Shown here: one piece after another, positions 44,301-63,335 of the stretch
Numbering within the stretch: position 1 is the first letter of the stretch
How the letters are laid out: each line of letters starts with the position of its first letter
Source of the DNA: Ascidiella aspersa
Taxonomy: Eukaryota
Direction of reading: 5' to 3'
NCBI GenBank assembly: GCA_963924565.1
Contig: OZ004613.1
Span: 21,638,001-21,702,000, forward strand
Length of the DNA: 64,000 nt
Program-made: the position numbers and the translations under genes
Notes under the pieces: model-generated
Database searches by the model: none
What the model was told of the DNA's origin: nothing
What the model saw: the letters and a program-made list of their open reading frames with translations, nothing else

Positions 44301-47300
44301 TGCTCATCCAGCAGTTTTATTATAAACAATCGACATTTTGACGTCTTATACAAGACGCCTTCGTCAGGATAATGGCCTATCTATGTATTCCTTTTATTTT
44401 AATATTTTTCATGTTGTTGTTTTTTTCGCAGATGGGCCAGTCGAACCACAGCGTCGGATTGGAAAACATGAACCGAAACAACAACCGGCTCAGTTTACCG
44501 CCAGGTCAGTTCATTGCTGAACTTCATTGTACATTTACCTGCTGAATAACACAGATAGTATTACATGACTTCATTCTTATTTTCACTTAACGTCCTCCTT
44601 GAAAACATGGTGTTGAACAAAAAAATATTAAATGTGAATTTATACTGCTTTCTTAAGTCTAAAAGAAGAGGGTCTATAAAAACATTGTCTTTTACAGTTA
44701 GTATAAACTGAAATGGGATCAGGGGGAAACCTTATCAGCTTGCTAACCATAGGTTGTGTAATCTCCTGCTGCTCGATCAACACATATGTTTTACTTGATA
44801 AATAACACGAAAACTATCAGACTTTAACTCTATTTTCACTTACCCCGTGCTCCTTAAAAACTTTGTGTTAACAAAAAATTATTAAATGTGAATGTAGACT
44901 GCGTGTTTCGCTCTAAAAGAAAAGAGTCGATAAAAACATTTGTCTTTTTAAGTTAGTATAAATTTAAATTGGGATCAGCGGAAAAGCTTAACGGCTTGCT
45001 AACAATGTGCTGTGTAATCTCCTTCTGCTCAATTAATTAACCCATATTCTTAAACTTGTTATTGCAGTGATAGGAGGCGAACCATCTTCTCCTGCCATCC
45101 ACTCAGCACCTGCCACCAACAAGCGATTCTTCCCGCAAAGTCTCGCTCCCGGATCAGCATCCACAGGAGGAAATAACAACAGCGCTCCCTCCAGCTCCCG
45201 TTCGAGCATCGCATCCACATCCAGCCTCGGAACAATATCCTCTTCCAACCCGACTCATTCCTCCACTTCATCACTGGGAGGAACCAACAGTCCGAGATCC
45301 GGTTCTCCTGTTCCTTGGTCTGGTTCTCTTGGATCGCTCTCCAGCGGAGCTTCGTCTGCATCACCTCGTCTTCTCCACAACCAGCACAAGAGCTCCTCCA
45401 ACGCTCAAAGATCGAGCTCCAGCTCTTCGGCTGACACAGTCAAGTCAGGAGGTAAATTCTTCGAAAACGATCATTTAAAATACAGGCTGCTTACCATGCA
45501 CATCAAGGGGCAGTGACATGCAAAATAGAAAATTTTATATAAAAACCTTTGAAGAACAACCAATAGTAGGTAACCAAACAAAAGTTGGTCTCGCATATTT
45601 TGCGATTTGCCAAAAAGTGAAAATGAGGAAATCCGTCGAATTTTTTTTGCATCCAGTGGAATAAACCATCCTAACCCGTTTGGTGGAATATAATTTTTTT
45701 AACGATTTTTTTTATTAATACAAATTAAAACAAAACCTTGAGACTAGAGATAGACCGACGATATATCGGTTTACCGATAATATCGGCCGATATTTGGCTT
45801 CTACCGATATATCGGTATCGGTAAATGTAGGCTAGTACTTTGGCCGATATTTTAGTGCGAAAATGTGATATAATTTTTCATGTACAACTAACAACTTAAC
45901 CATTTTTTGTTCAAAAAATTTGAGTTTTAGCATCACGCTAAGTTAATATGCGAAATAATAGTATAATAATTAATAAAGATATATAAATTAAAACGTTATT
46001 TGGGTTTTATTTTTAATTATTCTAGTTTTGAACATTTCCCAAGTATATAAAAAATCGGTATCGATATCGGTCCAAAAAAGTGATATCGTTCGATCTCTAC
46101 TTAAGACCTTGTGCGTTTGCAAATATTGCGTTCATACTGCCCCACGTTAAACTGAGACGTTTTATTATTTACTTTACAGGAGGGAGACACTCGCATCACG
46201 AGCGTCCAGTGATCAAGCAGACCCGCCCCAACGTTCGAAGCGGATCGTTCGGAGGCAACATGATGGATCGGAGGTTGGCGCACATCTCATCATCCTCATC
46301 CACCCCGTCGCTCCTCAACGCTCCGGGGTCCTCCAATCAGGTTCGTTGTGAAAAGAAGTTTGATTCAATTTGCGAAGATTCGATTTCTATTGTCATAAAA
46401 ATGCTAAGAGATTTTTAATGATTTTAAAACACTTTGCTGACCGTTTAGATATATATAAACAAGAACATTTAAATTTAGCGAATTGTTTTATCCTATTATT
46501 CCCAAGCGAGATATCTTTTTAAAGTTTCTTGCAAATAATAGGTAGCGCATAAACCAACAAAACTCACTCGAGTATTTCCAATCGAACGACCATTGTTTAC
46601 CAAAAAAGCGTGTTTTCTTAAGTAGCTAGCATAAATACCTTAAATAAATTATGAACTGCCTCTTGCTCAAACCCGTATCTAAATAAAAAACGCCCCTAAA
46701 AGTTTCAACGAACCTCGGTTTTTCTACAGGCGAGCCTGATCCTGCCCAACCACCCGCAGATTCCTCGCACGCCCAGCATCGACAGTGGCGTCATGAGCGC
46801 CGGATCCACCTCGGCCGACTCGGCCATCTTCAACGTGGCCGACGACGCCGATTTGTTCGGCCGCGGCCACCACCAACATCACCAGCAGCAGCAGAGAGCT
46901 CCCAGGAGGGGCGATCTGCCCGCGGAGCCAGATAGAAATTCTCCCATGTCGTCGAACGGCGACCCGAACGCGGACCGTCAGCGCCCCCATGCGGGCAGCC
47001 ACTCCGCCGCCGGGCAGCCGCAAGAGGGCGAGCAAGACAAAGTGGAGCAGACTTTTTTATCTGGATTTAGGGGTCAGGGGGATCCCCCGCGACCAGATAA
47101 CAAAGATCCCTTTCCGATGATGATGGCGCCGCCGACCACCCTCAATCTGGCCGGCGCGACGCCCTACGTCATCGACCCGGCGGCCTATCACCCCGGGCAC
47201 GTGCCGCCAGGGGTGGGGCTTCCCCCCAGGCAGCAGAAGCCGCTCGGCGCCACCGCGCTCAAAGGCATCCACGAATACCTGATTTGTGAGCGGCACGCGG

Positions 47301-50300
47301 CCATGAGGCGCCAGTTCCGACAAAACTTCGCGCACAGCCCGGTGGTGCAGCAGTACTCGCCCCGCGCCGATCGCCTGAAGACGCCTGAGGCCATTCTGGA
47401 GGAGCAGCTGCTCATGGAGCTCCAGCAGCAAAAGAGCGCCTTCCACAAGGGCCGCCGCGCAAAGGTGTCGCCGCCTGACGCGCGCGAAATGCAGAGCAAC
47501 CTGGTCGACGTGCGTCGCCTAAGTCTGAGCAAGTCCGACCCGTCGCTGCACAATCACCCGACGCAGTGGGACAGCAACAGCCCCAATCCGAACCAGCCAA
47601 CAGAGGTTGTCAAGTCTGCAGTAAGGCTTCCGCCCAACCGCACCTCGTCGCCCAAATGCCCGCCCATGCACCAACCGGGCTCTCTCGAAGCTGGTATGTC
47701 GCCATTCTCCCCGGTGTGTGGGGACTCTGGCTACGGCCCGACCACAGGCGACCTTCGCTACCAACCCTATTCATATTCAACTCCGCCTACACGCAACCAC
47801 GGCCATGCGATCCACTCTACCTCCCCGGCCGTCCACATGCAACAGCAGCAACATCAACAGATGCTTCGTGGCGGCGGCGACATGGACTGGCAATATCCCG
47901 GGCAGAACGAGCAGCTGTCCAAGTCGGCCAACACTCCTTCTTCGTTCCTGCCCCAAGCAATCAGCGAGCGGCTGAACGCCACAATGCCGGTTCACCATCA
48001 CCACCATCAACAGCAACAGCAGCACGTGTTCTCCCGCAGCGCCTCGTCGCACTACCCCGACATTTCGCCGGCCCTGCCGCGCTCCAACATGGTAAAGTCC
48101 AGCTCGTTCGACATCTACAACTCGCAGCCGGCCAGTCAGCATTCGGCCCCGGCGGCGGCGCGCGACTTTTACCCGATGAGGACGCTCGAAGAAAACGCGG
48201 CCGACCCCCGGCGCCGGCACCCCCTCGAGGAACACCTGTCGCGGCCCCAGGGGCGCAGGAAAGCCGCGCAGCAGCAGGACTGGGGTGAAACCGATCTGGA
48301 CGGCGACAAGCTGCAGCAGACCATGAAAGGTTGGTTTGTATTATTTGTTATGGCTGAAGTTGGATGGAGTGCGCTAACCTAAACCCCGTTTCAACACTGT
48401 GTGTATACTAAAGATTTGGCCGCAAATTAAACTTCAATCTGTTCTGTGACCGTAGTTTTTGTATGTTCTATTTATAGCCAGTATATCCAACTGATTTGAC
48501 TAAAGTAGCTTATTCTTTAGAGTTTTAGACAATATATGTTGTGTAATATAATATAGCCTAAGTTTAAATGGCATATCCAAGTACCATTATGGAGCAGGTA
48601 TCTAAAAATGTCCAATGGTCCACATAAATTTTATATATAAATTTTTTTGCTATGATGCGTTTACTCTGGTTTACTATATTTTAGTTTTTTGGGTTTGCCA
48701 AATATCGGCAAATGCAAGCGCGGCCAGAAGCGTATGCAATGAATTAATATCTTTCGTCATTTAAATCATAGATCAACCCCACATCCTATAGTTTGTTATT
48801 TTCTAAAACGTCTTAAAAACCGATTATTTTTATTAATAACAACGGGTATCACATTACGATTGCATTCGTTCCCAACCTGCCTATTCTTCATAGCCTGGGG
48901 CAGCAGCACCAGCTTGCCCGCCACCCCCCTCTCCACCAAGTCCATCCCCTCCGGTCACAAGCAACCTCCTCCTGTTCCAAGCCACCACGGCCAGGGACAC
49001 AACACTTCCTCCTCACAGGGAGGAAACAAGTCCGGATCCAGGCAACCACCTCCTCCACCACCACAGAGGACATCCAGGTTGGAAGACCCTTCAATACCGT
49101 TGTTAGTTGATTGTTTTTTTGTTTGGTTTTACCTATCGCAATCGCAACACTTCGCAACTTGGTTTTGACATTGGCAAGCCTGTCATAACTTATTATCCTG
49201 ACTAAACTATTTCTTAATTTAATTGTCCGTCTAGATCCAGTGGGTCTAGTGCAGTAGTTATCAACCGTGGTGCCGCGGCACCCTTGGGTGCCATTTCTAA
49301 GGCTCAAGGGTGCCGAGAGATATTTGAGAATCTTTAAGAATCTGCTTTTTTGTTCAACTCTTGAAAAAATTGTGTAAGATTACAGTTGAATAAGTCCAAT
49401 TGTAGCTTTCTACTTTGTCTAGAGTTGATGTGTGCTGCTCCAGTTTTGTTGCGACATTATAGTGAATTACCTACGGAAAAATCTTGTAGGGGTGCCGCAA
49501 TTTATTTATTATTTCTGAGGGGTGCCGCTAGCCATTAAAAGCTGAGAAACTTTGGTCTATTGAGACGTAAACTACAGTTTAACGTTCACGTAATTCTAAA
49601 ACATTTTTTTTTCTTAAGTTGGCCCTTGCCTTTTTTTGCCCCTTTGCCTTTGCCATTAAGTTTTGGTTAAATGTACTGATTTCATGCGTTAGGAATATAT
49701 TACCTTATCATTTGAATATTGATTAAATTGTGATCTTTTGCCATTCTTTGCCCTATTTTTTGGTAATGTTTCTTTTAACACTTTTCACTTTACTTCACAG
49801 CATCGGCCGCCCAGACCAGATTCGTCGCGAAAGCGCCTCCAGTTCACCCCTCAGTTCGCCGCCCCTCTCCCCCTCACCCACTGGGGATTACCCGACATTC
49901 GATGACGTCATCATGACGCAAGCAGCGGTGGGCAGAATTGCTGTCACCCCCTCGGGCGCAATGGCCAATGGCCACGTGTCCCATCAGGGCAGAACCCCTT
50001 TTCGTTCAGGTGAGTGTTTTACCATTAATTGTGATTTATTTATGTTAGTTGTATACTACCTAGGACGAGCTATGCGTATGATATCGGTAAGCATTCGTAG
50101 TGTTGCGAGCTTGTGAAAAACTGGGCGAGTTTCGTTGACAATGTTTGAAGTTGAGAGCGTGATTTTAGATCCAGGAGCTTCAGTGCACAATGTTTAGCTG
50201 TATCTTCGTTATGATATCGTTAAAGTGAATTTAGATATCGCAGTTTCGTAGCCTAATCGCTGAGAGCCAACGTTGGTTTGGGAACAAATGAAATGCAACG

Positions 50301-52800: not shown

Positions 52801-53297
52801 ATAAAATACAACTTGCTTATCAAACTAAACGTTAGTTCAGGCCTTAATATAAATTCCAGTCCACGGTTTTATTTTTCAACAAAAATCTTGTATATTATGT
52901 TCTACAAGCCAACACGTAAAACACACGCTGTACACCAACTAACGATCGCTTGGTTTTCCACAGACGCCATTTACTGCATAAGGCAATCGTCAAACTGAAC
53001 CCCTTTCTCAACAACCATCGTAGTCGATATATATTTTAGGCAAGAAATATAACGATAAATAGACCAAAGATGTGCAAATTACTATGTACTGTCAAACTTA
53101 GGAAGGTAAACAACACAATAAGTTCGGGTTATGGTAACATACAAACTCGAAGTAAATCGGACAATTCAAAGTATGAAGCTTGTATTAACTTTGTTGTAAT
53201 CTAAAAATCGCGCTCATAAGTAGCTGGCAATTATGTCTAGTTTTGAATCGCTGATAAAATGTCTGCAGCCGGCCAAATTCTCAGCTTTTGGTGTTGA

Positions 53298-53993
53298 CTA
53301 GTACTGGTCGGCAAAAGAGCGGCTCCAACCCACCGCCTTCGCGTTGAAATCGAGCTGGCAGTTGGGCGCGGTGACGAAAGTGCCCCGACCGATTCTGAGC
53401 CCCTGCTTTCGGTGCGGCGCGTTGCGGTGGTTCTTCGCGTTGAAGTAGATGGCGCTGGTCGGGATTCCGTTCACATAGAGCGCCTGCTGGGGCTCATTCT
53501 CGCTGCCAACGTACTCTTCCTCAGCAGCGCCGTTCATGTAGTAGTCGGCGTCGCCACCTTCAATGTAGTTTCCGGACGCAGGTTCGGCCGAAACGCTTCG
53601 TTGCTGCTGTACGCGGTAATAAGAGTCGGCTGTGTTCCACCTTCGCGGAGGCGGATTGCTCTCTTGTTCCTCGGGCATCTTGTAATTGGCCTCCACCTTG
53701 GCGCGCCACTCCGGCGGCGGCTCCGACATCGGCGGCAGAACGTTGCAGTTACCGCTCCTTATGGAACGCGCCGAAGGGCCTTTGAAGATATGCGATGGCA
53801 TGTACTTGACGGCCGTCGACGAGTTGACCGCCATGTTCCACGGGGTGGATCGCTGGTCGATTGATACTGGCTCGGGCTCCTCTTCTGCGACTTGCTTCCC
53901 GTCAGAAGACAGGCTCGTGTACTTTTCCATCCGCTTCTTCTGCTTGATGAACATCCTTCCTCCTTTTGTTGAGCTGCGCATCGTCTTCGGGTT
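53298..53993 (-). CDS. MYOZ: Myozenin-like last exon
   Basis: ctttcag|NPKTMRSSTKGGRMF...DFNAKAVGWSRSFADQY*; 232 codons, phase 0. Confidence 0.85.
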   Translation of the reverse strand, partial: NPKTMRSSTKGGRMFIKQKKRMEKYTSLSSDGKQVAEEEPEPVSIDQRSTPWNMAVNSSTAVKYMPSHIFKGPSARSIRSGNCNVLPPMSEPPPEWRAKVEANYKMPEEQESNPPPRRWNTADSYYRVQQQRSVSAEPASGNYIEGGDADYYMNGAAEEEYVGSENEPQQALYVNGIPTSAIYFNAKNHRNAPHRKQGLRIGRGTFVTAPNCQLDFNAKAVGWSRSFADQY

Positions 53994-54875
53994 CTGAAAG
54001 TAAGTAAGTGTTACTTGTCGACGGCTGATAGGCTAGCGGCCAGTCTATAATTAGAAGTTACGAGGCGATCTATTAGCGGCCGTGATTGGTGTAACGTCAA
54101 GGCGGCTCCAATTAAAATCTGACATATTGAATAGCTTTAACGTATCATTTCACGTATCAAAGGCTCAGTTTAACTTGTGCAACTAAAATTATGGCAAGGC
54201 AAACATGTATTTCCAACTAGACACAAAACGTTCATGCTATATAGATTTCGGTACAGCTCGGTATATATGAGGATATATATATATCTTAACCCTTACACAA
54301 AAAGCTAGCTGCGAAACTTACCACCTCGGCGAGAACCTTGTATCCCTTTCCGACCTTTTTGGATCGCTGCTTCAGGCGTACTTCAGGAGTAACTCTGCCG
54401 CTGTTTTCCTGGATCAGCTCTTGCGAATAAGGGTAGGACACCTTCTGCGCGCTACTGTAGCTGGGCATTTTGTTGTGGTGCACCTCTTGAAGCCTCCCGC
54501 GCTGATAGAAGGTCCTGAAGTCCCCTGGTCTGTCACCTGGGGTGTCGTACACGTGGACGTACACGCTGCCGTTGGGTCTTGGGGCCACAGGGGGCGGTCC
54601 CTTTGCCACGAACTGGGTCTTCTCTCTCTTGGCCACAGGGCCCGCCACCGCCCGGAAGGGCTTGTACTTAGTGTGTGCAATGCTATTGAACACCATTTCT
54701 TGCTATTAACACGTTTGGAGTCAAAATACAACCAAAGGCGTACAGAACTTTCCTACTTAGCCGCTTTACCGGGCTGCCACAAACCCGATCGTGGCGTGAG
54801 CGACTGAGCGGGCCAGGTGACGAACGATTCGACGAAGGCCATTAATGCTGGTCGCTGGGGAACGCTTTCCTGCAT
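53298..54875 (-). CDS. MYOZ: Myozenin/calsarcin-like protein (2-3 exons, start uncertain)
   Basis: KKVGK...TKGGRMFIKQKKRMEKYT, STPWNMA and C-terminal DFNAKAVGW occur in the order of myozenin motifs as recalled (LGKK...RGSKMFK.RQ.R.EKF, SPWE.A, FNR..KGW/QGW). Confidence 0.65.
54322..54682 (-). CDS. MYOZ: Myozenin-like exon (5' boundary uncertain: 54682, 54666 or ATG at 54696)
   Basis: ...KGPPPVAPRP...KKVGKGYKVLAEV|gtaagt; phase 0 out, matches next exon. Confidence 0.7.
54757..54875 (-). CDS. Candidate first coding exon of myozenin-like gene
   Basis: ATG-MQESVPQRPALMAFVESF...GKAA aa|gtagga; phase 2 fits acceptor at 54682 across a 74-nt intron. Confidence 0.4.
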
Positions 54876-54904
54876 CTCGCCCGCTCTCGGGGGACGCAAA
54901 TCTG

Positions 54905-54926
54905 TGACGTCATCGCAGGTCAGCTG
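54905..54926. promoter_or_regulatory. CRE palindrome plus E-box upstream of myozenin-like gene
   Basis: TGACGTCA at 54905-54912 and CAGCTG at 54921-54926, just 5' of the candidate ATG. Confidence 0.45.
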
Positions 54927-55560
54927 CGCGAAATGCCTTCGAGTGAGTGTTCGCGCTCTTCATAATAAAGTTAATACATTCCGCCCATGACTGTCGTTAG
55001 GCGCTGTTTATGTTAGTATGCATTTGACTTATTCTTTAGAGAAAGAAATCCTAAACGAACAAACAGTCCTTAAACGTTGCATTGATAAAGGTACAACAAA
55101 ATTCTCAATTATATGGAACAATCCACGTGAAACGGGCACAAATACCATTTAACTTGCTTTGAAACATATCATTTTATTTTGACCATGTAAATGTAAACCG
55201 TGTACTGAATTTCTATTTTTTTCAGAATAAAATCAGGAGTTATTATTAATGTACACGGATGTCAAACAGAGCTTTATATACAGTATTATATAGCCTATAT
55301 ATATATAAGGCACAAACAAATTGATTAAACTGGATAAATTTGGTTGAATGTTAAAATAAAAAATCAGCAACTACTGAATCCAGGATTGGGGCATGATCCG
55401 TGCAGCCCTCTTCTTCAAAATATATTTTTTGCTGCGTAATAACATAACTAACAAGTTCTTTTTTCTATTTTATGTGATAATTATAACTTATAAAATTTTC
55501 GGCCCTTTAAACGGAATTATTTGAACATTAATATATTTCAAGTCTCTATCCTGTTTAGAT

Positions 55561-55882
55561 TGGGAGTCGGCAACCTTTTCCTAATCTCGGGTCAAAAATA
55601 AACACAAAAGTTCTCGTTGGGCCGTAATACACTCTATACTGACAAGTAGTTTTTAGGCATTCGATTCAAACAACTTTTAATCACGCGCACCTGTAATTTT
55701 TTGAAGATTTCGCAATTTGCATTTATGTAATCGTTAAAAAGATTTTGCATTTATAATAGTAAAATTATCAAAAAAATACGAGAAAAGTCTCTTGTCTAAT
55801 TTGTAAAAGAGTCAGCGAGATGGTTGATTTCCTTTGGCGACCGGATCAAGTCTGCGGGTTGTAGGTTGCTTAATTCGCACTG
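55561..55882. mobile_element. Degenerate hAT MITE
   Basis: GGGAGTCGGCAACC...TAGGTTGC...CTG; flanks GTTTAGAT/GTTTAGAA. Confidence 0.6.
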
Positions 55883-57035
55883 GTTTAGAATTTATTGAAT
55901 GTTTATATTCTAGTGTCACAAATAACCTATACAAACTCTAAACATGTTTAAAAAATAAAATTTGAAATTGATTAGCCCAAAGCAATCCATGCTGTGTTTA
56001 CGTGAAACGTAAGAACTTGTCCTAATAGGCTATTTGCCAACTTAAATAGCAATATTACATTTCGCGCTTCTATCGAACCTTTTACAGTTTTTTTCATGCC
56101 TACATTCCTCCTTTGGAACACACCCTACAAACTAACATTTGCGCCAAATACTCTGGATTTTTTTCACGATTCGCGTGACATTTGTGTTTTTAAGAGCATT
56201 CCCAAAAATTAAATCTTTGTTTACTTAATCTAAAAAAGTTTAAATATTTCGTGTAACCACAAAGAGAATAAATAATAATCAAACGTTTTTACCAATCTAA
56301 ATAAACTAAGGCTAAAACTTAGATCAGCACACACGCCTTGAGTTTGTTTACCACGGAAAACTCAGCAACTATTCAGTCTCAAATCTTGTTAAAAACTGCA
56401 ACTGATCGTTTTGTCCAAAACCTATTTAATGGAATACAATATTTTAAGTAGTTTTATAGATATGTAAAATTGATGTCCAATAAGTCTTACATATCACACT
56501 TTACCTATAGGCTAAATACTCCTGGCAAATGATATAGTTAAATTTTATTTTTAATTAGTCATAGTATTTTCTCCTTGTTAGTCCATTATTTTTAAGTAAT
56601 GTATAACAGCACTTTCAGTATACTATTTCTTTATTCGGAAACTTTAAGGGAACGGCCTCTGCTTTGCTTAATTAAGTTTACGCTAATCAAAATACGTTTA
56701 AACAAAATACATGCAACACTTATGTAATAAATACATTAGGACAAACAAAAATTAGGTAGATATGTACACGATGAAAAACATGCAGGACGAGATTTTATTA
56801 ATTTAAACTGATGAAAAGATTGACAAACAGTTAAAAAAAAGAAAATAGCCTAAACAATATTTGTACAAGTAATAAACCACAAAAAAGATCTTCTAATGAC
56901 TTTCGGAACGTTAATAGATTTCGAATAGACCTATGCCAGTCATATAATAAATTTGTTGTTTGATATCTTTCAACTATAAAATCTCTTATTTTAACTATTT
57001 TTTGGCCTGAAGCACATTGCAGTGAAAAGTTATTA

Positions 57036-57481
57036 CTAGTGACCAGTGGGTGACCATTTGGCAGGTGATACGTTAGTGGCTTTGTTTGGCAGACTGAGTA
57101 CTTTACGCTGTAGCGCCGGTGGATCAAAATCGAACATGGTCTCTTCTGGAGCATCTGTTGACAGGGCAGCCCCCATTCCTGGAGCATAAGTATCGAAATG
57201 GACGTGCCTGGCATTGTAAACTGGCTTGGTCGTGGCCCTAGATTTATCCATGACCTCCTTGTAACCTGGGGGAGGTGGCAAATTGTATTTATCAACGTTT
57301 GGTGGATCATATCGCTGGCCTGGAGACCAAACAGAAAAAGCAGGTTTCTTTAATGGTCCTTCCTGGTCTTCAGTTTTGCTTTGGTTTATTTGATGCGCGT
57401 TTTCTAGTGATATTTCAGGGTCTTGTTGCGCTATTGGGAGTTCTGGTTGATTGGTCTCGGCTGTGTTACAGGGCTTGTTTT
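57036..57481 (-). CDS. SYNPO2: Synaptopodin-like terminal exon (PPPPGY)
   Basis: ttacag|NKPCNT...LPPPPGYKEVM...SPAKWSPTGH*; minus-strand AATAAA at 56794-56799. Confidence 0.78.
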
Positions 57482-60400
57482 CTGTAAAAGAAGAGCTAAA
57501 GTATTGTCCGTTTTAATTACCTAAAGAGAAACGCAAAAGCTTGCATAAGCGATCCAAACACCAGTTAAAGGTCAAGCAAAATTACAATCATTATAATTCA
57601 CTTGTTAGAGTCTTTACAGTTTTAACATAAGCCATACTTACCATATTGAACGACCAGACTTTTGTTGGAGTCCGAGCTCAGAAATCTAACCAGATCTGGT
57701 TTGGGGGCAACTCTTGGGGGAGGCCCCTTTTTCACAGGCATCTTCGCATCATTATGAATGAACACCTCGTCCAGTGGCTGGGGCTGCTGCTCCGACGCCT
57801 TACCCGACGATGACGTGGAACCTTTGTCGTAGGATGACGTCATCGATGACGTTCCAGAGTTGTTCGAGTCGGATGCGGCGTCATCACAGTTGACGAAGTC
57901 GGCGGCCGAGGGTGGACGACGTGCGACGTAATATTGCTGGTAGTGTAGGGGGTCCTTGCCTCTACCTTTTTTGTTTCCACTTGGTCTCCTCTAAAGGTCA
58001 ATCATTTTGTTGTAAACAAACTCACAAAGTATATTTCACGAAATTACTTCACTAGGCAGGTCATTTACTAAATGGCTTAAATCTAAGCCTCAGTCGTTCT
58101 GTCTGGTCTGATTGTGTAATCAGGAAATATTTATGACAAAAAATAACAATAATTTTAGGAAAATATTGAAGTGGGTATCAATTTTGTTTTAAACTAGTAT
58201 TGTGTTTCGCTCTCCAAAATTTCGAAATGCTTTAAATGAAATAGCAGTTGACAGTCAATGATTTTATTTATCACTATTTTTAACTAAATGCTTTACAAAA
58301 TAAGCTTATGGAAGTGATTCTAAAACATTTTTCTTGTAAATTTTTTTTATCGTGACGCACTCAACATAATGAACTAACTTCTCCAGCCCTTATTTGATGC
58401 ACTCTAAAGTCAATCAATTAGGAATTAATCAACGGGCACATAAAAATTAGGTAAAACGTGCCCGTGAGAAAATGATAATACCTAAAATCAGTTTATGATT
58501 GCAGTCAAATTTCGATACGGATCATAGTATAGCGCCTTTGGAAGATTAAAACGAAGCACAGTTTGAGAAAATCAAGCTTATGGCATTGTGTCCAGAGTTA
58601 TCGCATGCACATATCACAAGAGTCAATAGTAAAATAATAAAACTGTAATAAACTGCAATAATAAATGAATAAAATAATAAAAATATCTCAAAATATATTC
58701 GTTCAATGCAACTTTTGAATAGCTTTTGTAACCGATGACAATCTCCCAAAACCTATAATTTTAACACATTAAACCTAACCCAACATGCACCAACCGGTGA
58801 ATCCGAGTCTGAAAACTTTCTAAACTCTCCCATAACGTCATTCATGCTCTTCCTGCTTTTTGGGTCGAGGGCCGGCTTCTGCTGGTTGCCCATGTTTACG
58901 AGAGGAGCTGGTACGATCCTTGCGTCCTTGCTCCCGTTGCATTCCCTAGTGTAGCGGTCCATCCGCTGTTGCTGCTTCTCGAACATTCGCGCGCCTTTTC
59001 CTTTCATCGCTCCTACAAGGAAGATAAAGTTTAAAGCAGTATCCAGCCACGCGTTTACAGCAAATGCGAGACGCGTTTCAACGTTCAATGGTCACCCAAT
59101 TTGAAGGTAGAAAGGCGGATTAATTGAGTGATATCAGGGTTATGTGTTATCAAACAGCTGTCAACCACTGACACAATCAAGTTTTTACAAGTTTTGTTAC
59201 AGTTTAGGCTTGCTTCACTTAACCTATTAAGCTCTATAAACTTTTAAAATATGAATGTTTTACCTCCTGCAATTGTTCCGAGGGCTTGCGGTTTGCCTTC
59301 ATTCTGCTTTGCTTGGTTGCCGTTCTTTAGGTAACTCACTTGCGGAGTTGCGACTTTGGTTGAAACTGGCTTGTTAAACTGCTGTGGCGTGAAACTGGAA
59401 AAGTACATCACATTTTATAAACTGCAAAAAATGTTCTGATAAAAGTTACCTTTTTGCCTTAATCGCGGTTTAACTTTTCACTAAGCATCGTGCTGTGAAT
59501 ATTTGTTATAATGATAAAGGTTGAGTAACCTGAAGACAAAGCAACAAACATTTAACCGGTACCAAGTACTTTTACACAAAAATTGCTATTAAAATCGCTA
59601 TTTCTTCTTAAAAAAGTCGATTAAATTGCAACCACGTACTCCATTCCATGCCATTACCTCTTTAAGCAAAACAACGAATCGTGTATTGTAGAGTCGTAAT
59701 ACCTTGGTCTTGATGGAGACTTGTTCTTAACGGTGGTCGCTTTGCTCTCTTCGTCCAAAATAGCGCCTAGTGACGGCGAACTTTTGTATACGGTTTCCAT
59801 TTTCGGCTCGTACTTTCCTTTCGCGGGATCCAGCAGTTTCAAACAGGCCATCACTTTCGGCTTTTCATCCGCGCTGGAAGGCTCATTTGGCTTCGGTGGA
59901 TAGACCATAGGGGAAGGTGCACGATAAGAACTGTACACTGGCGGCGGAGGCACAAAAGATTGCGAGGTGCTGACGTTCGGAACTGTGGAAACTGTACCGT
60001 TCGCTAATGATGATGGACTTTTTGGGAGGTTTACTGCTTCACACTCTATACTGACTACATCTAAGGTGTTTTGTAGAAATGGCTTGGGTAAGGGACTTAC
60101 TGCTTTTAAAACATCATTCTCTGTGGTTTGTGTATTACTCGTTTCTTCTACATTTGATCCGTTAAAAATTGTATCCTGGTATGATCGAGATGATGGAGTT
60201 GAAGAGACATCGCTGGCAGCTGGTTGGTATGTTGTGACAGGAGCAACTGCTGGAGGACTCCTTAGTTTTTCAACATGTTGTCGCTGATAAGGTGATGGAG
60301 AAGCGCATTTTAGGGGTTCCTTAAGAAGAGACACAGATGGCGAAGGTGGAGCATTTTTTACGACGTTTTGGTGTGGCTGATATGTCACTTGTGGCGTTTG

Positions 60401-63335
60401 TTTGAGTTGCGAATTTTCTGGAGACGGTTTCCACGTTGACAGGGGTGTACTTGAATTGCTTGTCGGAAGTGTCTCTTTGTTTGTTGCGAATGGATAGGCC
60501 ACAGTCGGTGCGTTTACTGCAGTCGTAAAAAAGTATAAATTTCTGTTCAATTTCAATAGAGTTAGTTCAAAATTGAAAACGGAAAATTATAAAATTTTAA
60601 TAGGTTTAACTATGCTTTCAATTGGCTTAAAACCTAAATCCCATAGTTTAGTGGGCCAAGAAAGTAAGGATTACGCCATACATTTTTATAGGGGTATACT
60701 ATTCAAACACACAATATGTATTAATTTGGTAAAATTAATATAAATGGCAATTAATGCAAGCTAAATAATTGGCAAGGACAGCCGACAGTCGAGTTGGAAT
60801 GTTGTTAGATTTTTTGCATTAGAAAAAAAGTAAAACGCTACCTAAAGTGCTTTGTTCGTCAAATTGTTGTTGAATACAATTCTTCTCTGTGAAAACAATT
60901 GTAAATTGATTTATGCACATAGCCAAATGATTCTTGCTATTTATAAAGGCCACCGCAATAACATGTTCCGGATGAAAGATATAAGGCAAAATCAAAAAAA
61001 TTAGATCTATATTTCACCTTGAGCTGTAGACGGCCTGGCCTTTCGAGGCTGAAACGTAATGGCGGAAAACTTTCTCGCCGGTTTGCTGTAAAGCGAAGAT
61101 GAGGCATTTCTCTCGCTGGCGCTCGTTCCGTTTTGCGCCAACTGCATCTGCTGAAAGGGAGGAGTCGCCGACGCGGAAACTTCACCGGACAAAAGTGGAT
61201 GCTGCTGGTTTTTCGCGGACGGCGTCGGGGGCAAAACCGACCTGAAAACGTTGCGCTTGGTCTGAGCGCCGCTGGCGATCTGCGTACTTGGAGGTTGCCG
61301 TTCGTCGCGTTCGGAAGACGCACTTTGGCGACGATGGACCACCTCGTCGTCTGACGACCAGTCGGCACTGGCAAATCGAGGGGCGTCCCCGGCCCAGGGC
61401 GACCTGTCCCTCGGGCGCATTCGGCGCGCTCGGCCGGCGCTCGGGTCGTCGGTGCTGTACTGCACCTTGGCCCGGCCCAGCTGCTGAGCCACCTGATCCA
61501 CGCTGTTGGCTGCTGAAGAGGTGGAGTGGATGTTGCTGAAGGACACGGGAGTGTAGGACTCACGCTCACACACACGCGGCTGGTACGCCTGGTTGACGAA
61601 GGCGATTGGGCCGTTTGGTGGGACGGGTGGCAGGGGCGCGTCTTCGGGCGCCGCGCCGCCGACCACGAATTTTTCCATGCGTCGCTGACGCTTGGCGAAC
61701 AGCTTGGCGCCCTTGCCCTTCATTTGCACAGCGTCCATGGCGAGGTTTCGCAGCTGATTTTGCACAATCTGCAGACAAGGTTGCTCTTAAGTCGTTTGAG
61801 CGCTGAATTCCAATGGCTAATAAATACAGCTTTTTTGCAGCGGCTGGTAATTAAACATTTTTTGCTTTCATATGTAAATAGCGTTTGGCATTTCTGGTTA
61901 GCAATTTAAGCATTTTATTAAATGCAAATCAGGCTTTTGGACATGAATTATGTGTTATTTAGTGGAATATTGTTACCTGCTCGGACGTGCTAAGCTTGCG
62001 GTCTTTCTCCAGCACGTTATTTGGACCTGGGTGGTCGTAAACGGAAATCTCGTCATCAGTCGATATAAGAAAAAATGAGTCGGAATCCGCCTTCTCCGAG
62101 TCAGACTCCTTCGTTCAAAATTTAATCATTAAAAAGTCATCACCAAGTACAATTGTATGGATAAATTAAAACACAGGCAAAAAACCTAGAAAAACCTGTT
62201 ATCTGTTTCACTTGCGCGCTGCAGTGCACAAATCTCGTTGCATAACAGATTAAAATCCTAGCAGCGGTTTCAGAGGAAAGCAGAACTTAGTTAATATAAA
62301 AATGGGAGACTGGTGGAATTGTACATATATAGGTCTGGCTGTTTGTTTGAACTTTCTACAGGTATAAAAACACCCAATTTATTTTTTTTTAACGTATATG
62401 TTTTTAATGTTTTATTCCTTAATTTAGACCATAACTTGCTTTACCGTTAAGAAACTAAGTTAAATTCAGGTATGATTTCCATTTCTGAAATATTCAGCTT
62501 TGAGGTTGGTAACGCTGCGTTTGCTCGTAAATCATAACTTAAGTGTCTATGTTCTGTAACTTAATATCGTATTTTGGCACCAATAACTGTAGTATCGCCC
62601 CATTATCTACCTGAAAATAACGTACAGAATATAACACACATATGGCCGAACCATGAGCATTTTTTTAATAAGCTTGACTGAGTGTGAGTTAGACCAGCGC
62701 TGTTTAACCTGTCCTTTTTTAACCGGCCCATAGGGTGCATCAAAATATGTATGGGGTGCACCAGTACGAAAAGGTGTACACGGTTACATCACAAACTTTT
62801 AAAGAACCATTAATATTTCACATTCATGATATTAAAAAAATGTAGGTTGCAACTGATGTATAAAATAGCTGTTTTATGGCATGCAATAGTACTCGCAGAA
62901 CAGCCGTCAGTCATAATCGAACTCTCACCGACAGTGTGTAAAACGTCTGCAGCTACGCACGGTTTAATTGACACGGTGATAATGATATTATTCAAAATTA
63001 TTTTTACCTCAGTTTACCTTTTAAGTAAACAGGGTGCTTTAGTTCGTCACAACAACTTTAAGGGTTCACCAAACCAAAAAAGGTTGAAGAGCATTGACTC
63101 AAAGAACAAACACAGACTTAGTTCACCTCACTTTCTCTTCCTTCTTCCTCCTCAACCGGCTGCGTCCCGTATCCGACAATTGCGAACTTCTCAGATCTTC
63201 TCCTCCGCTTCTGGAACATGCGAGATCCTCTTGTGCGCGAGTTGCGATCTCTCAGCAGCCTCGAGATGCTCTTACAGACCTTCTTCGCTTCCTGTTTCCC
63301 GGTCGTTGAGGTTCTTTCTTCCGGAAGACTCGTGG
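57036..63335 (-). CDS. SYNPO2: Synaptopodin-2 (myopodin)-like Z-disc/actin protein, 8 coding exons in window, 5' end incomplete
   Basis: EAKKVCKSISRLL...RGSRMFQKRRRRSEKFAIVGYGT parallels SYNPO2 EAKSKCKSIALLL...KGVLMFKKRRRRARKYTLVSYGT (recalled). Also KGKGAKLFAKRQRRMEKFVV, KGARMFEKQQQRMDRYT and PPxY motifs. Exon phases are consistent (3095 nt). Confidence 0.85.
57642..57990 (-). CDS. SYNPO2: Synaptopodin-like exon
   Basis: tttag|RRPSGNKKG...KKGPPPRVAPKPD...VQY|gtaagt; phase 0/1. Confidence 0.8.
58795..59012 (-). CDS. SYNPO2: Synaptopodin-like exon (motif 3)
   Basis: gtag|AMKGKGARMFEKQQQRMDRYT...SDSP|gttggt; phase 1/0. Confidence 0.88.
59264..59394 (-). CDS. SYNPO2: Synaptopodin-like exon
   Basis: ttccag|FTPQQFNKP...ALGTIAG|gtaaaa; phase 2/1. 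Confidence 0.8.
59658..60516 (-). CDS. SYNPO2: Synaptopodin-like exon (Pro/Ser/Thr-rich, PPPPVY)
   Basis: Long ORF; phase 1/2; a second in-phase donor would end the exon at 59703. Confidence 0.8.
61018..61768 (-). CDS. SYNPO2: Synaptopodin-like exon (motif 2)
   Basis: ctgcag|IVQNQL...KGKGAKLFAKRQRRMEKFVV...STAQ|gtgaaa; phase 0/1. Confidence 0.9.
61977..62108 (-). CDS. SYNPO2: Synaptopodin-like exon (acidic)
   Basis: ESDSEKADSDSFFLISTDDEISVYDH...STSEQ|gtaaca; 132 nt, phase 0/0. Confidence 0.8.
62695..63096. mobile_element. Second copy of the 25598-25960 MITE family, opposite orientation
   Basis: Reverse-complement similarity along the length (e.g. agttcgtcacaacaactttaag, ataatcgaactctc, ccagtacgaaaagg); TSD degenerate. 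Confidence 0.8.
63127..63335 (-). CDS. SYNPO2: Synaptopodin-like exon (calsarcin-type motif 1)
   Basis: tgcag|TSLPEER...RGSRMFQKRRRRSEKF...GRESE|gtgaac; phase 1/0. Confidence 0.9.

What the first reader, a model, noticed from the sequence alone, without database searches (positions are those of the whole stretch)
53298..63335. Tandem synaptopodin-like then myozenin-like gene pair, possibly the pre-vertebrate SYNPO-MYOZ module
Seen: the upstream minus-strand gene has three calsarcin-type motifs and ends with its own stop (57036) and AATAAA signals. About 2 kb downstream, a second unit with its own promoter-like motifs encodes one such motif plus STPWNMA and FNAKAVGW. Known: vertebrates carry three same-orientation pairs, SYNPO-MYOZ3 (human chr5), SYNPO2-MYOZ2 (chr4) and SYNPO2L-MYOZ1 (chr10). 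Inference: this is the single-copy counterpart, which would date the pair and a myozenin ortholog to before the vertebrate genome duplications. Both genes share a KGPPP(R)VAP[KR]P segment, consistent with tandem duplication.
Basis: partly seen in the sequence, partly recalled or inferred. Interest (0 to 1): 0.75.

Follow-up and report, generated by a model that had tools for sequence, protein, structure and literature searches.

The report
Sea-squirt podin gene plus mini-podin neighbour
A sea-squirt synaptopodin-like gene is followed on the same strand by a separate small gene of the same protein superfamily, conserved across tunicates, which sits where vertebrates keep myozenin but could not be shown by sequence to be a myozenin.

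Summary
On the minus strand lies a phase-consistent, at least 8-exon synaptopodin-like gene (63335-57036) with three calsarcin-type helices, PPxY motifs and its own stop. A two-exon unit lies 2.3 kb downstream (54696-54322, 53993-53298; 356 aa). It has one such helix plus TPW, PPEWRAKV and FN..GW motifs.

The small unit looks like a gene of its own:
- It is annotated as a stand-alone 324-366 aa "uncharacterized protein" in Ciona intestinalis, C. savignyi, Clavelina and Styela.
- Its MV start follows an in-frame stop.
- The same gene order is present on contigs of a second tunicate.
- Two E-boxes lie at the same distance from the start codon in both species.

The locus is single-copy in this genome.

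The myozenin reading is only partly supported:
- Position and motif order fit.
- Pfam Calsarcin misses both exons and all 7 orthologues scanned.
- A profile search of 1.84 billion proteins returned 27 hits. The only vertebrate named among the clusters looked up is a ray synaptopodin-2-like protein. Its C-terminal part aligns with the small protein. I recognised no myozenin.
- The acidic C-terminal PDZ-binding tail of myozenins is absent.

No myozenin sequence could be obtained and the RNA test gave nothing. Myozenin pro-orthology is about 0.4.

The parts
63127..63335 (-). Upstream podin-like gene, exon A (helix 1 type motif at 63228-63184); needs a further 5' exon, not found
   Evidence: AG acceptor, GT donor and open frame. 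Pfam Calsarcin 14.4 bits. 38% identity over 63 aa to residues 366-428 of ray synaptopodin-2-like P0031. tblastn E 2.5e-6.
61977..62108 (-). Exon B, acidic linker
   Evidence: Splice sites and phase 0/0.
61018..61768 (-). Exon C (helix motif at 61711-61667)
   Evidence: Pfam Calsarcin 20.4 bits, E 4.2e-4, below the cut-off of 24. It is the only genome-wide Calsarcin candidate. The donor GT is at 61017-61016, so the end printed was one base too far.
59703..60516 (-). Exon D, Pro/Ser-rich, with a PPxY motif (PPVY)
   Evidence: Open frame and phases. Weak colinear match to P0031 611-638 (E 9.9, not significant alone).
59264..59394 (-). Exon E
   Evidence: Splice sites and phases.
58795..59012 (-). 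Exon F (third helix motif at 58995-58951); ends in phase 0
   Evidence: Pfam Calsarcin 17.3 bits. 56% identity to L010 1627-1854.
57642..57990 (-). Exon G, with KKGPPPRVAPKPDL
   Evidence: 63% identity to L010 2436-2765. Phases.
57036..57481 (-). Exon H, last coding exon, with PPxY (PPGY) and TAG stop at 57038-57036
   Evidence: 38% identity to L010 4178-4561, with the stop at the equivalent place.
56544..56799 (-). Three AATAAA signals after the upstream stop (starting at 56799, 56635, 56549)
   Evidence: Pattern positions. Use not tested.
54812..54927 (-). Putative proximal promoter of the small gene: E-boxes GCAGCTGACC (54927-54918) and CACCTGGC (54819-54812), and a CRE palindrome beginning at 54912 (minus strand)
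   Evidence: The two E-box blocks lie at -231 and -123 from the ATG here, and at about -225 and -124 in L010 (offsets printed, corrected by 3 because the L010 ATG is at 8276). The CRE is not present in L010. GC is 0.52-0.56 here against 0.24-0.37 in the intergenic DNA.
54322..54696 (-). Small gene exon S1 (125 codons from ATG 54696; AKGPPPVAPRP; ends KGYKVLAEV)
   Evidence: In-frame TAG at 54705-54703. 34-41% identity to residues about 13-125 of the Ciona and Clavelina proteins. 49% identity to L010 8276-8656.
53994..54321 (-). Intron of the small gene (328 nt, GT..AG, phase 0)
   Evidence: Sequence. The orthologous proteins run straight across the junction.
53298..53993 (-). Small gene exon S2 (231 codons plus stop): helix at 53963-53919, then STPWNMA, PPPEWRAKVE, FNAK..APHR, DFNAKAVGW
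   Evidence: Small-family profile 309.9 bits. 48% identity to P0001 and L010. No Pfam family.

Best explanation
The region holds two separate, co-oriented genes of the calsarcin-helix (podin/myozenin) superfamily.

The upstream gene encodes a synaptopodin-like protein of at least 1,015 aa. It has three calsarcin-type amphipathic helices, a PxVAPKP segment and two PPxY motifs. No PDZ exon was detected.

The downstream gene lies 2.3 kb further on. It encodes a 356-aa protein, probably disordered. I call it a mini-podin: an N-terminal PPPVAPRP segment, one helix preceded by KGYKVLAEV, and then the linear motifs TPW, PPEWRAKV, FN..APHR and DFN...GW.

Shown: exon structure, its own start and stop, single copy, conservation of the gene and of the gene pair in tunicates, and homology to Calsarcin-positive invertebrate proteins and to the C-terminal part of a vertebrate synaptopodin-2-like protein.

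Inferred: it is transcribed from its own E-box promoter, most likely in muscle. It would then act as an actin, alpha-actinin or filamin adaptor at Z-discs or dense bodies through the helix and the C-terminal motifs, as described for the calsarcin region and the C-terminal extension of synaptopodin.

Its evolutionary identity is open. It is a compact duplicate of the podin gene. That duplicate is either the pro-orthologue of vertebrate myozenins (about 0.4) or a tunicate-side split or duplicate carrying the podin C-terminal module (about 0.35).
For: Gene models. The eight upstream exons have canonical AG/GT sites, and their phases chain without a break: 0/0, 0/0, 1/2, 2/1, 1/2, 0/0, 1/2.

Separate small gene:
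- It is annotated alone as XP_002131876 in Ciona intestinalis (340 aa), H2Y773 in C. savignyi (324 aa), LOC143470978 in Clavelina (344 aa) and LOC120347633 in Styela (366 aa).
- S1 and S2 match these proteins colinearly.
- Contigs of 1.6-1.7 kb from sequencing-run assemblies carry uninterrupted 336-364 aa ORFs across the exon junction.
- The MV start is shared by the window, L010, P0012, P0013 and P0017.
- An in-frame stop lies directly before the ATG here and 90 nt before it in L010.
- Of the 27 profile hits in 1.84 billion proteins, 26 are 375 aa or shorter. None is a long tunicate protein fusing podin exons to S1/S2.

Pair conserved. L010 and L009 carry F, G, H (with stop), S1 and S2 in that order on one strand.

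Promoter. Two E-box blocks lie at matching distances from the ATG in both species.

Superfamily:
- hhalign of the small family against the Calsarcin-positive invertebrate family gives probability 94.7%, E 6.1e-8, over 60 columns.
- The small-family profile matches ray synaptopodin-2-like P0031 at both helices (17.2 and 22.7 bits) and at 960-1097 (17.4 bits; TPW and PPEEWKARV at the same spacing).

Function. Passages of PMC11753949 say the calsarcin region of synaptopodin is needed for actin-rich inclusions. Passages of PMC13759171 say the C-terminal extension of synaptopodin holds alpha-actinin binding sites. The Atlas model of the Styela protein has mean pLDDT 0.43.
Against: - No RNA evidence from this species. 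The one RNA-seq run gave 0 laid reads out of 7.79 million records read, about 6% of the run, which is no test.
- An AG lies just upstream of the ATG here (54704-54703) and in L010. Exons A, B and F end in phase 0. An in-frame splice from the podin gene into S1 or S2 is therefore possible on paper.
- The E-box conservation rests on two species and on one 10-mer and one 8-mer. By my own rough estimate, about 0.1 shared 10-mers and 1.6 shared 8-mers are expected by chance between stretches of about 320 nt.
- Muscle expression and binding partners are inferred, not shown.
- Clustering at 50% identity could hide long fusion isoforms.
Confidence: 0.72

Rival explanations
1. The small gene is the single-copy pro-orthologue of vertebrate MYOZ1-3, and the pair is the pre-duplication SYNPO-MYOZ module. 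This is a refinement of the best explanation, not its opposite.
For: - Placement is immediately downstream and co-oriented, and it is conserved in a second tunicate. That matches the vertebrate pairs. All three pairs are recalled; only the MYOZ1-SYNPO2L adjacency was seen, in passages of PMC11477451.
- The gene is single-copy, and there is no other Calsarcin candidate in the genome.
- The compact order helix, then PW about 45 aa later, then FN, then FN..GW is the ancestral arrangement seen in Calsarcin-positive invertebrate proteins. As recalled, it is also the order in myozenins.
- The upstream podin gene lacks any C-terminal TPW/PPEW/GW module of its own. That fits complementary loss after duplication.
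Against: - Pfam Calsarcin gave no hit for S1, S2 or any of the 7 orthologues, even at E up to 10.
- I recognised no myozenin among the 27 hits of the exhaustive profile search. The only vertebrate named in the 10 clusters looked up is a podin.
- A PDB profile search at E up to 10 found no myozenin chain.
- The C-termini of the 12 aligned family members end in aromatic or small residues. They lack the acidic PDZ-binding tail recalled for myozenins.
- PPEWRAKV and PPPVAPRP are shared with the ray podin.
- The 125-aa S1 part has no recalled counterpart in myozenins.
- The absence of myozenins is weak evidence. A short motif-only match would fall below the roughly 41 bits needed for that library.
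Confidence: 0.4
2. The small gene is a tunicate-side product of the podin gene itself. Either the C-terminal third split off or was duplicated, in the manner of a SYNPO-T unit, and gained a start codon and a promoter. Vertebrate myozenins would then have arisen independently.
For: - Ray synaptopodin-2-like P0031 is colinear with the upstream gene followed by the small gene: 374-418 = exon A, 485-505 = exons C/F, 611-638 = exon D, 695-713 = exon G, 751-761 = S1, 964-1017 = S2.
- TPW and PPE(E)W[RK]A[RK]V lie about 40 residues apart in both.
- The tunicate podin ends without this module.
- Vertebrate SYNPO has a 3' exon that encodes a C-terminal extension and is also expressed alone as SYNPO-T (passages of PMC13759171).
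- All named members of the small family are tunicates.
Against: - The matches of S1, S2 and exon D to P0031 are individually not significant by tblastn (E 8.6, 2.7, 9.9).
- The small gene has its own helix at the ancestral distance from the PW motif. The ray podin has no helix there.
- This reading needs two independent origins of a co-oriented podin-plus-small-helix-gene pair.
Confidence: 0.35
3. S1 and S2 are not an independent gene here. They are only alternative 3' exons of the podin gene.
For: - Phase-0 donors of exons A, B and F fit the phase-0 acceptor of S2. They also fit an AG just before the S1 ATG, both here and in L010.
- Vertebrate podins use alternative 3' exons.
- No RNA reads were obtained.
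Against: - Stand-alone gene models exist in four annotated tunicates.
- The MV start after in-frame stops is conserved.
- The 5' extensions seen in P0015 and P0005 do not resemble podin exons.
- No long fusion protein appears among the 27 profile hits.
- E-boxes are conserved upstream of S1.
Confidence: 0.07

Closest known systems
Vertebrate synaptopodin family (SYNPO, SYNPO2/myopodin, SYNPO2L); the tool-derived example is Mobula hypostoma synaptopodin-2-like XP_062899634 (P0031)
   Same: The upstream gene shares with P0031 the helix-1 block with its CKSI..LL lead-in, the KGKGA.LF/MF helix-2 block, a PxVAPKP segment and PPxY motifs. Its Pfam Calsarcin scores are sub-threshold in the same way (14-20 bits here, 18.2 bits for P0031). 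The small gene shares TPW, PPEW[RK]A[RK]V and a terminal ..GW motif with the podin C-terminus.
   Different: - No PDZ exon was found in the window, in the two 10-kb stretches fetched beyond it (the next 10 kb and a stretch 20-30 kb out), or near the locus genome-wide.
- There is a third helix (exon F).
- The C-terminal module sits in a separate gene that also has a helix of its own.
Myozenin / calsarcin / FATZ (MYOZ1-3; Pfam PF05556)
   Same: A small, disordered protein with one calsarcin-type helix followed by a PW motif and two FN-type motifs. It is encoded just downstream of, and co-oriented with, a podin gene. The vertebrate side of this comparison is recalled.
   Different: - It fails PF05556.
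- It has a 125-aa N-terminal exon with PPPVAPRP.
- It has PPEWRAKV.
- It lacks the acidic C-terminal PDZ-binding tail.
- No direct sequence comparison with a myozenin was possible.
Invertebrate two-helix Calsarcin-domain proteins (P0033 family; named member: hypothetical protein of the annelid Ridgeia piscesae, P0068). Drosophila CG1674 is called a synaptopodin orthologue in PMC11753949
   Same: The block CF.IA.DL / GYKVLAEV plus helix plus (S/T)PW, at about 45 aa spacing, aligns with 94.7% probability. A terminal N..K..W/GW motif is also shared.
   Different: The invertebrate proteins have two helices in one gene, an FYDDP..YPTIEEQ head and an SADEFERMRL block. P0033 itself scored 44.6 bits for PF05556, above the cut-off, and many members carry it in the precomputed annotation. 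They lack PPEWRAKV. Whether CG1674 belongs to this set was not tested.
SYNPO-T (3'-terminal product of the vertebrate SYNPO gene)
   Same: A short product made from the 3' part of a podin locus, carrying the C-terminal extension (passages of PMC13759171).
   Different: [quoted passage not shown] The tunicate unit has its own first exon, its own helix and a conserved start. No sequence comparison was possible.

Membership tests
Myozenin/calsarcin (small gene) | Pfam PF05556 Calsarcin at or above the 24-bit cut-off | tested here: not met
   No hit for S1 or S2 at E up to 1. No hit for 7 of 7 orthologues at E up to 10. No hit for the post-helix part of S2. HMMER filters may drop very weak matches.
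Myozenin/calsarcin (small gene) | One calsarcin-type amphipathic helix (G..MF.K...R.EK[YF]) | tested here: met
   Strict pattern at 53963-53919. The block aligns to helix 2 of Calsarcin-positive proteins with probability 94.7%.
Myozenin/calsarcin (small gene) | Acidic C-terminal PDZ-binding tail ending in Leu. The motif is recalled; a paper title on it appears in the reference list seen. | tested here: not met
   The C-termini of the 12 aligned members end in ..QY..YY..YC or ..GA. None is acidic and Leu-terminated.
Myozenin/calsarcin (small gene) | Myozenins are the closest vertebrate relatives (reciprocal search or phylogeny) | tested here: inconclusive
   Forward profile search: 27 hits. The only vertebrate named among the 10 clusters looked up is a podin, and I recognised no myozenin. 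The reverse search and a tree were impossible, because no myozenin sequence could be obtained.
Myozenin/calsarcin (small gene) | Placed directly downstream of, and co-oriented with, a podin gene | tested here: met
   True in the window and in L010 and L009. The vertebrate arrangement is recalled; MYOZ1-SYNPO2L adjacency was seen in passages of PMC11477451.
Myozenin/calsarcin (small gene) | Binds alpha-actinin, filamin C, calcineurin and Enigma-family PDZ proteins at the Z-disc | not testable with these tools
Synaptopodin/podin (upstream gene) | Calsarcin-type region as in SYNPO, SYNPO2 and SYNPO2L | tested here: met
   Three helices. PF05556 scores are 14.4, 20.4 and 17.3 bits. These are sub-threshold, as is the 18.2 bits of the named ray podin P0031.
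Synaptopodin/podin (upstream gene) | Colinear similarity to a named vertebrate podin outside the bare helix | tested here: met
   Exon A against P0031 366-428: 38% over 63 aa, E 5e-11 in a 5-protein database, and tblastn E 2.5e-6. The exon G, D and H matches are short and weak.
Synaptopodin/podin (upstream gene) | PPxY (WW-binding) motifs | tested here: met
   PPVY in exon D and PPGY in exon H. PPxY is named as a podin feature in passages of PMC13759171.
Synaptopodin/podin (upstream gene) | N-terminal PDZ domain (SYNPO2 and SYNPO2L only) | tested here: not met
   No PDZ-like match in the window, L002 or L003. Of 18 genome-wide matches to the P0031 PDZ, none lies on contig 7 near 21.7 Mb. The 5' end of the gene was not found.
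Synaptopodin/podin (upstream gene) | Homology regions H1-H3 as defined for the podin family | not tested
   The regions are defined in PMC13759171 (passages only).

The most novel reading that the evidence does not exclude
The tunicate mini-podin is the single pre-duplication counterpart of vertebrate myozenins. The SYNPO-MYOZ tandem pair would then date to the common ancestor of tunicates and vertebrates. Myozenins would have begun as a compact duplicate of a podin gene that kept the ancestral helix-PW-FN..GW unit. In tunicates the duplicate also took over the C-terminal module that the neighbouring podin gene lost.
Probability: 0.4. Interest if true: 0.55.

Novelty: new variant of a known kind. 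Interest (0 to 1): 0.45.

Why it matters
Myozenins and podins are Z-disc and actin adaptors linked to cardiomyopathy, atrial fibrillation and kidney disease. Their common origin is known only as a shared "calsarcin" helix.

A conserved, single-copy tunicate gene next to the podin gene gives a simple chordate model. It combines that helix with the podin C-terminal motifs. In Ciona (LOC100181543) it could be used to ask what the helix-plus-PW/GW unit does, and to date the SYNPO-MYOZ pairing.

In the paper library searched:
- No paper held both "myozenin" and "Ciona".
- None held the accession names of these proteins.
- The 3 papers holding 5 or more of the MYOZ and SYNPO2 gene names were expression lists.

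The gain is modest. It is an orthology and gene-origin question, not a new mechanism.

Tried and rejected
RNA test. The look-up of sequencing runs offered one RNA-seq run of the species, X5. Read laying on 53150-59149 laid 0 of about 7.79 million records read from it, so splicing and transcript ends could not be tested. X1 and X2 are DNA contigs covering all 30 bins. X4 covers 18 of 30 bins, introns and intergenic DNA included, so it is also DNA.

Getting a myozenin sequence. PDB searches with the small-family profile, with P0032 and with the invertebrate profile found no myozenin chain at E up to 10. No reciprocal search or tree was therefore made.

Pfam on C-terminal modules alone. I scanned the invertebrate P0033 and P0050 tails, the ray P0031 tail and the post-helix part of S2. 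None hit Calsarcin, so that test cannot discriminate.

Rejected ideas:
- A recent tandem duplication inferred from the shared KGPPP(R)VAP[KR]P. The segment is also in the ray podin and in the invertebrate protein P0050.
- A second C-terminal module hidden in the window. The profile scan of all six frames found only S1, S2 and the helix exons.
- A second locus in the genome.
- A PDZ exon.
- The CRE palindrome at 54912 as a conserved element. It is absent from L010.

Not done:
- The bacterial promoter/terminator scan was not used, as it does not apply to an animal gene.
- The spliced model was searched exon by exon. The joined 356-aa sequence was never built or sent.
- Supplements were not asked for. 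Figure S3A of PMC11753949 aligns the synaptopodin and myozenin helices and may bear on the helix comparison.

Full report
WHAT IS THERE

The window is contig 7, 21,638,001-21,702,000, of a 308.6-Mb assembly in 75 contigs. The relatives found show it is a tunicate. I did not test that.

On the minus strand I could chain eight exons with canonical splice sites and unbroken phases (the end of exon C was corrected by one base to 61018):

| Exon | Coordinates |
|---|---|
| A | 63335-63127 |
| B | 62108-61977 |
| C | 61768-61018 |
| D | 60516-59703 |
| E | 59394-59264 |
| F | 59012-58795 |
| G | 57990-57642 |
| H | 57481-57036 |

Exon H ends in TAG, and AATAAA follows at 56799, 56635 and 56549. These exons encode 1,015 residues. 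Exon A starts inside a codon, so at least one 5' exon is missing. I did not find it. The next 10 kb beyond the window holds a rhodopsin-type receptor gene on the same strand (7tm_1, 70.8 bits).

The second unit lies 2.3 kb downstream. S1 runs 54696-54322: 125 codons from an ATG that directly follows an in-frame TAG at 54705-54703. S2 runs 53993-53298: 231 codons and a stop. A 328-nt GT..AG intron in phase 0 separates them.

THE MOTIFS ARE REAL AND LOCAL

A strict pattern for the calsarcin-type helix hits four times in all six frames of the 64 kb. The hits are in exons A, C, F and S2, and nowhere else.

Pfam Calsarcin (PF05556, cut-off 24 bits) gives sub-threshold hits to the helix part of its model:

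| Exon | Bits |
|---|---|
| C | 20.4 |
| F | 17.3 |
| A | 14.4 |

It gives no hit to the five other reading frames scanned, those of exons D, G, H, S1 and S2.

Genome-wide six-frame scans found one Calsarcin candidate (exon C) and four matches to the small-family profile (S2, S1, F, A). All lie in this locus, so the pair is single-copy at this sensitivity.

THE UPSTREAM GENE IS A PODIN

The only vertebrate named among the 27 hits of the exhaustive search is Mobula hypostoma synaptopodin-2-like, P0031. It is 1,107 aa, has a PDZ domain, and scores 18.2 bits for Calsarcin.

- Exon A aligns to its residues 366-428, with 38% identity over 63 aa, including the lead-in to the helix.
- Exons C and F align to its second helix.
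- Exon G's PRVAPKPDLV aligns to 695-713.
- Exon D's PPPPVYSS region aligns to 611-638.

Only the first two of these four are significant. PPxY motifs occur in exons D and H.

No PDZ exon was found in the window, in the two 10-kb stretches fetched beyond it, or near the locus. The 18 genome-wide matches to the ray PDZ all lie elsewhere.

THE SMALL UNIT IS A GENE OF ITS OWN, CONSERVED IN TUNICATES

- Word and profile searches found a compact family. An HMM search of 1.84 billion representatives gave 27 proteins at E of 0.001 or below, 26 of them 375 aa or shorter.
- Named members are stand-alone "uncharacterized proteins" of Ciona intestinalis (340 aa), C. savignyi (324 aa), Clavelina lepadiformis (344 aa) and Styela clava (366 aa).
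- S1 matches their residues about 13-125 and S2 their residues about 128 to the end. The proteins run straight across the predicted junction (KGYKV[LI]A[ED]V, then the helix).
- Several members come from 1.6-1.7 kb contigs with one uninterrupted ORF, as expected of mRNA.
- Two JGI metagenome contigs of another tunicate (L010, L009; 48-63% amino-acid identity) carry exons F, G, H, S1 and S2 in this order on one strand. H ends at the equivalent stop. S1 starts with MV, 90 nt after an in-frame stop.
- Upstream of S1 the two species are otherwise unalignable. They share GCAGCTGACC and CACCTGGC, both E-boxes. These lie at -231 and -123 here, and at about -225 and -124 there.
- The 300 nt before the ATG are GC-rich (0.52-0.56) against 0.24-0.37 in the spacer.

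I read this as a conserved proximal promoter, probably for muscle. That is inference.

WHAT I COULD NOT SHOW

RNA. The one RNA-seq run of the species gave no reads on the 6 kb laid, out of 7.79 million records, about 6% of the run.

On paper, exons A, B and F end in phase 0. They could splice in frame to S2, or to an AG just before the S1 ATG. Alternative 3' exon use is therefore not excluded. No long fusion protein was among the 27 hits.

IS IT A MYOZENIN?

For:
- The placement fits.
- The gene is single-copy.
- The compact order is helix, then a PW motif about 45 residues later, then two FN-type motifs, the last ending in GW.

Profile-profile comparison aligns KGYKVLAEV plus helix plus TPW to the second helix block of an invertebrate family, with 94.7% probability and E 6e-8 over 60 columns. 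That family's reference protein P0033 scores 44.6 bits for Pfam Calsarcin, above the cut-off. Its one named member is from an annelid. So the small gene keeps the ancestral unit.

Against:
- Pfam Calsarcin misses S1, S2 and all 7 orthologues tested.
- I recognised no myozenin among the 27 hits, and no myozenin chain answered the PDB searches.
- The family's C-termini lack the acidic PDZ-binding tail that I recall for myozenins.
- The family profile matches the ray podin three times: at both helices, and at 960-1097 (17.4 bits). There TPWDAA and PPEEWKARV lie about 40 residues apart, as TPWNMA and PPPEWRAKV do here.
- S1's KGPPPVAPRP matches the ray's 751-761.

The ray podin is thus colinear with the upstream gene followed by the small gene, though the S1, S2 and D matches are weak one by one. 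The upstream tunicate gene has no such C-terminal module.

Two readings remain:
1. A pre-vertebrate tandem duplicate that became myozenin in vertebrates. The tunicate podin later lost its own tail.
2. A tunicate-side split or duplicate of the podin tail, comparable to the vertebrate 3' exon that encodes the synaptopodin C-terminal extension and is also expressed alone as SYNPO-T (passages of PMC13759171).

I put them at about 0.40 and 0.35. The absence of myozenins is weak evidence, because a short motif-only match would not reach the score that library needs.

HOW IT PROBABLY WORKS (INFERRED)

It is probably a disordered adaptor. The Atlas model of the Styela protein has mean pLDDT 0.43.

Its helix corresponds to the calsarcin region that synaptopodin needs to form actin-rich inclusions (passages of PMC11753949). 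Its tail corresponds to the podin extension said to hold alpha-actinin binding sites. It would therefore work at Z-discs or dense bodies.

LITERATURE

I saw passages only of PMC11753949, PMC13759171, PMC11477451 and PMC11203038. The last lists SYNPO2 among genes with tunicate orthologues and does not mention myozenin.

- No paper held both "myozenin" and "Ciona".
- None held the accession names.
- Three papers held 5 or more of the MYOZ and SYNPO2 gene names. All were expression lists.

The positions of the three human gene pairs, and of RAPGEF2 and RAPGEF6, are recalled, not checked.

The look-up of encoding contigs, structure prediction and the Atlas for sequences it does not hold. The joined 356-aa model was never built or searched. 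All searches were exon by exon.

Noticed in passing
window 54927-54918 and 54819-54812 (minus strand); L010 about 8051 and 8152: Two E-box-containing blocks (GCAGCTGACC, CACCTGGC) lie at nearly the same distance from the small gene's start codon in two tunicates whose flanking DNA is otherwise unalignable. This may be a muscle-type proximal promoter.
   Followed up: partly
L002 4405-5958 (minus strand), i.e. 4.4-6 kb beyond the window's end: A 517-aa open frame for a rhodopsin-type receptor (7tm_1, 70.8 bits) with an LDL-receptor class A-like head (21.8 bits, below cut-off). It is the next gene upstream on the same strand and limits the room for 5' exons of the podin gene.
   Followed up: partly
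window 45067-50116 (plus strand), e.g. the 529-aa frame at 46793-48382: Long, GC-rich (0.54), low-complexity open frames with His/Gln runs and no Pfam family. They are probably 3' exons of the plus-strand RAPGEF-like gene, which would then end tail-to-tail with the small gene. Not tested.
   Followed up: no
proteins P0007-P0011 and P0029 (JGI and sequencing-run assemblies): A sub-group of the small family starts MGEE followed by a long Ala/Pro/Val/Glu/Gln repeat region. It has an extra 8-residue insert (GKTEDFNY) after KGYKILADV. It comes from 1.3-1.7 kb contigs of unnamed organisms, perhaps pelagic tunicates.
   Followed up: no
window 58995-58951 (exon F) against exon C 61711-61667: The tunicate podin has a second copy of the helix-2 type motif (KGKGA.[LM]F). 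The ray podin has one. Exon F is conserved in L010, so the extra helix is not private to this species.
   Followed up: partly
window 57038-57060 (end of exon H) and P0031 638-653: The last residues of the tunicate podin (..SPAKWSPTGH) resemble an internal segment of the ray podin (..AQPAIWSPTG; 62% over 16 aa, E 0.004 in a 5-protein database). This is out of order relative to exon G. It may be chance or a rearrangement.
   Followed up: no
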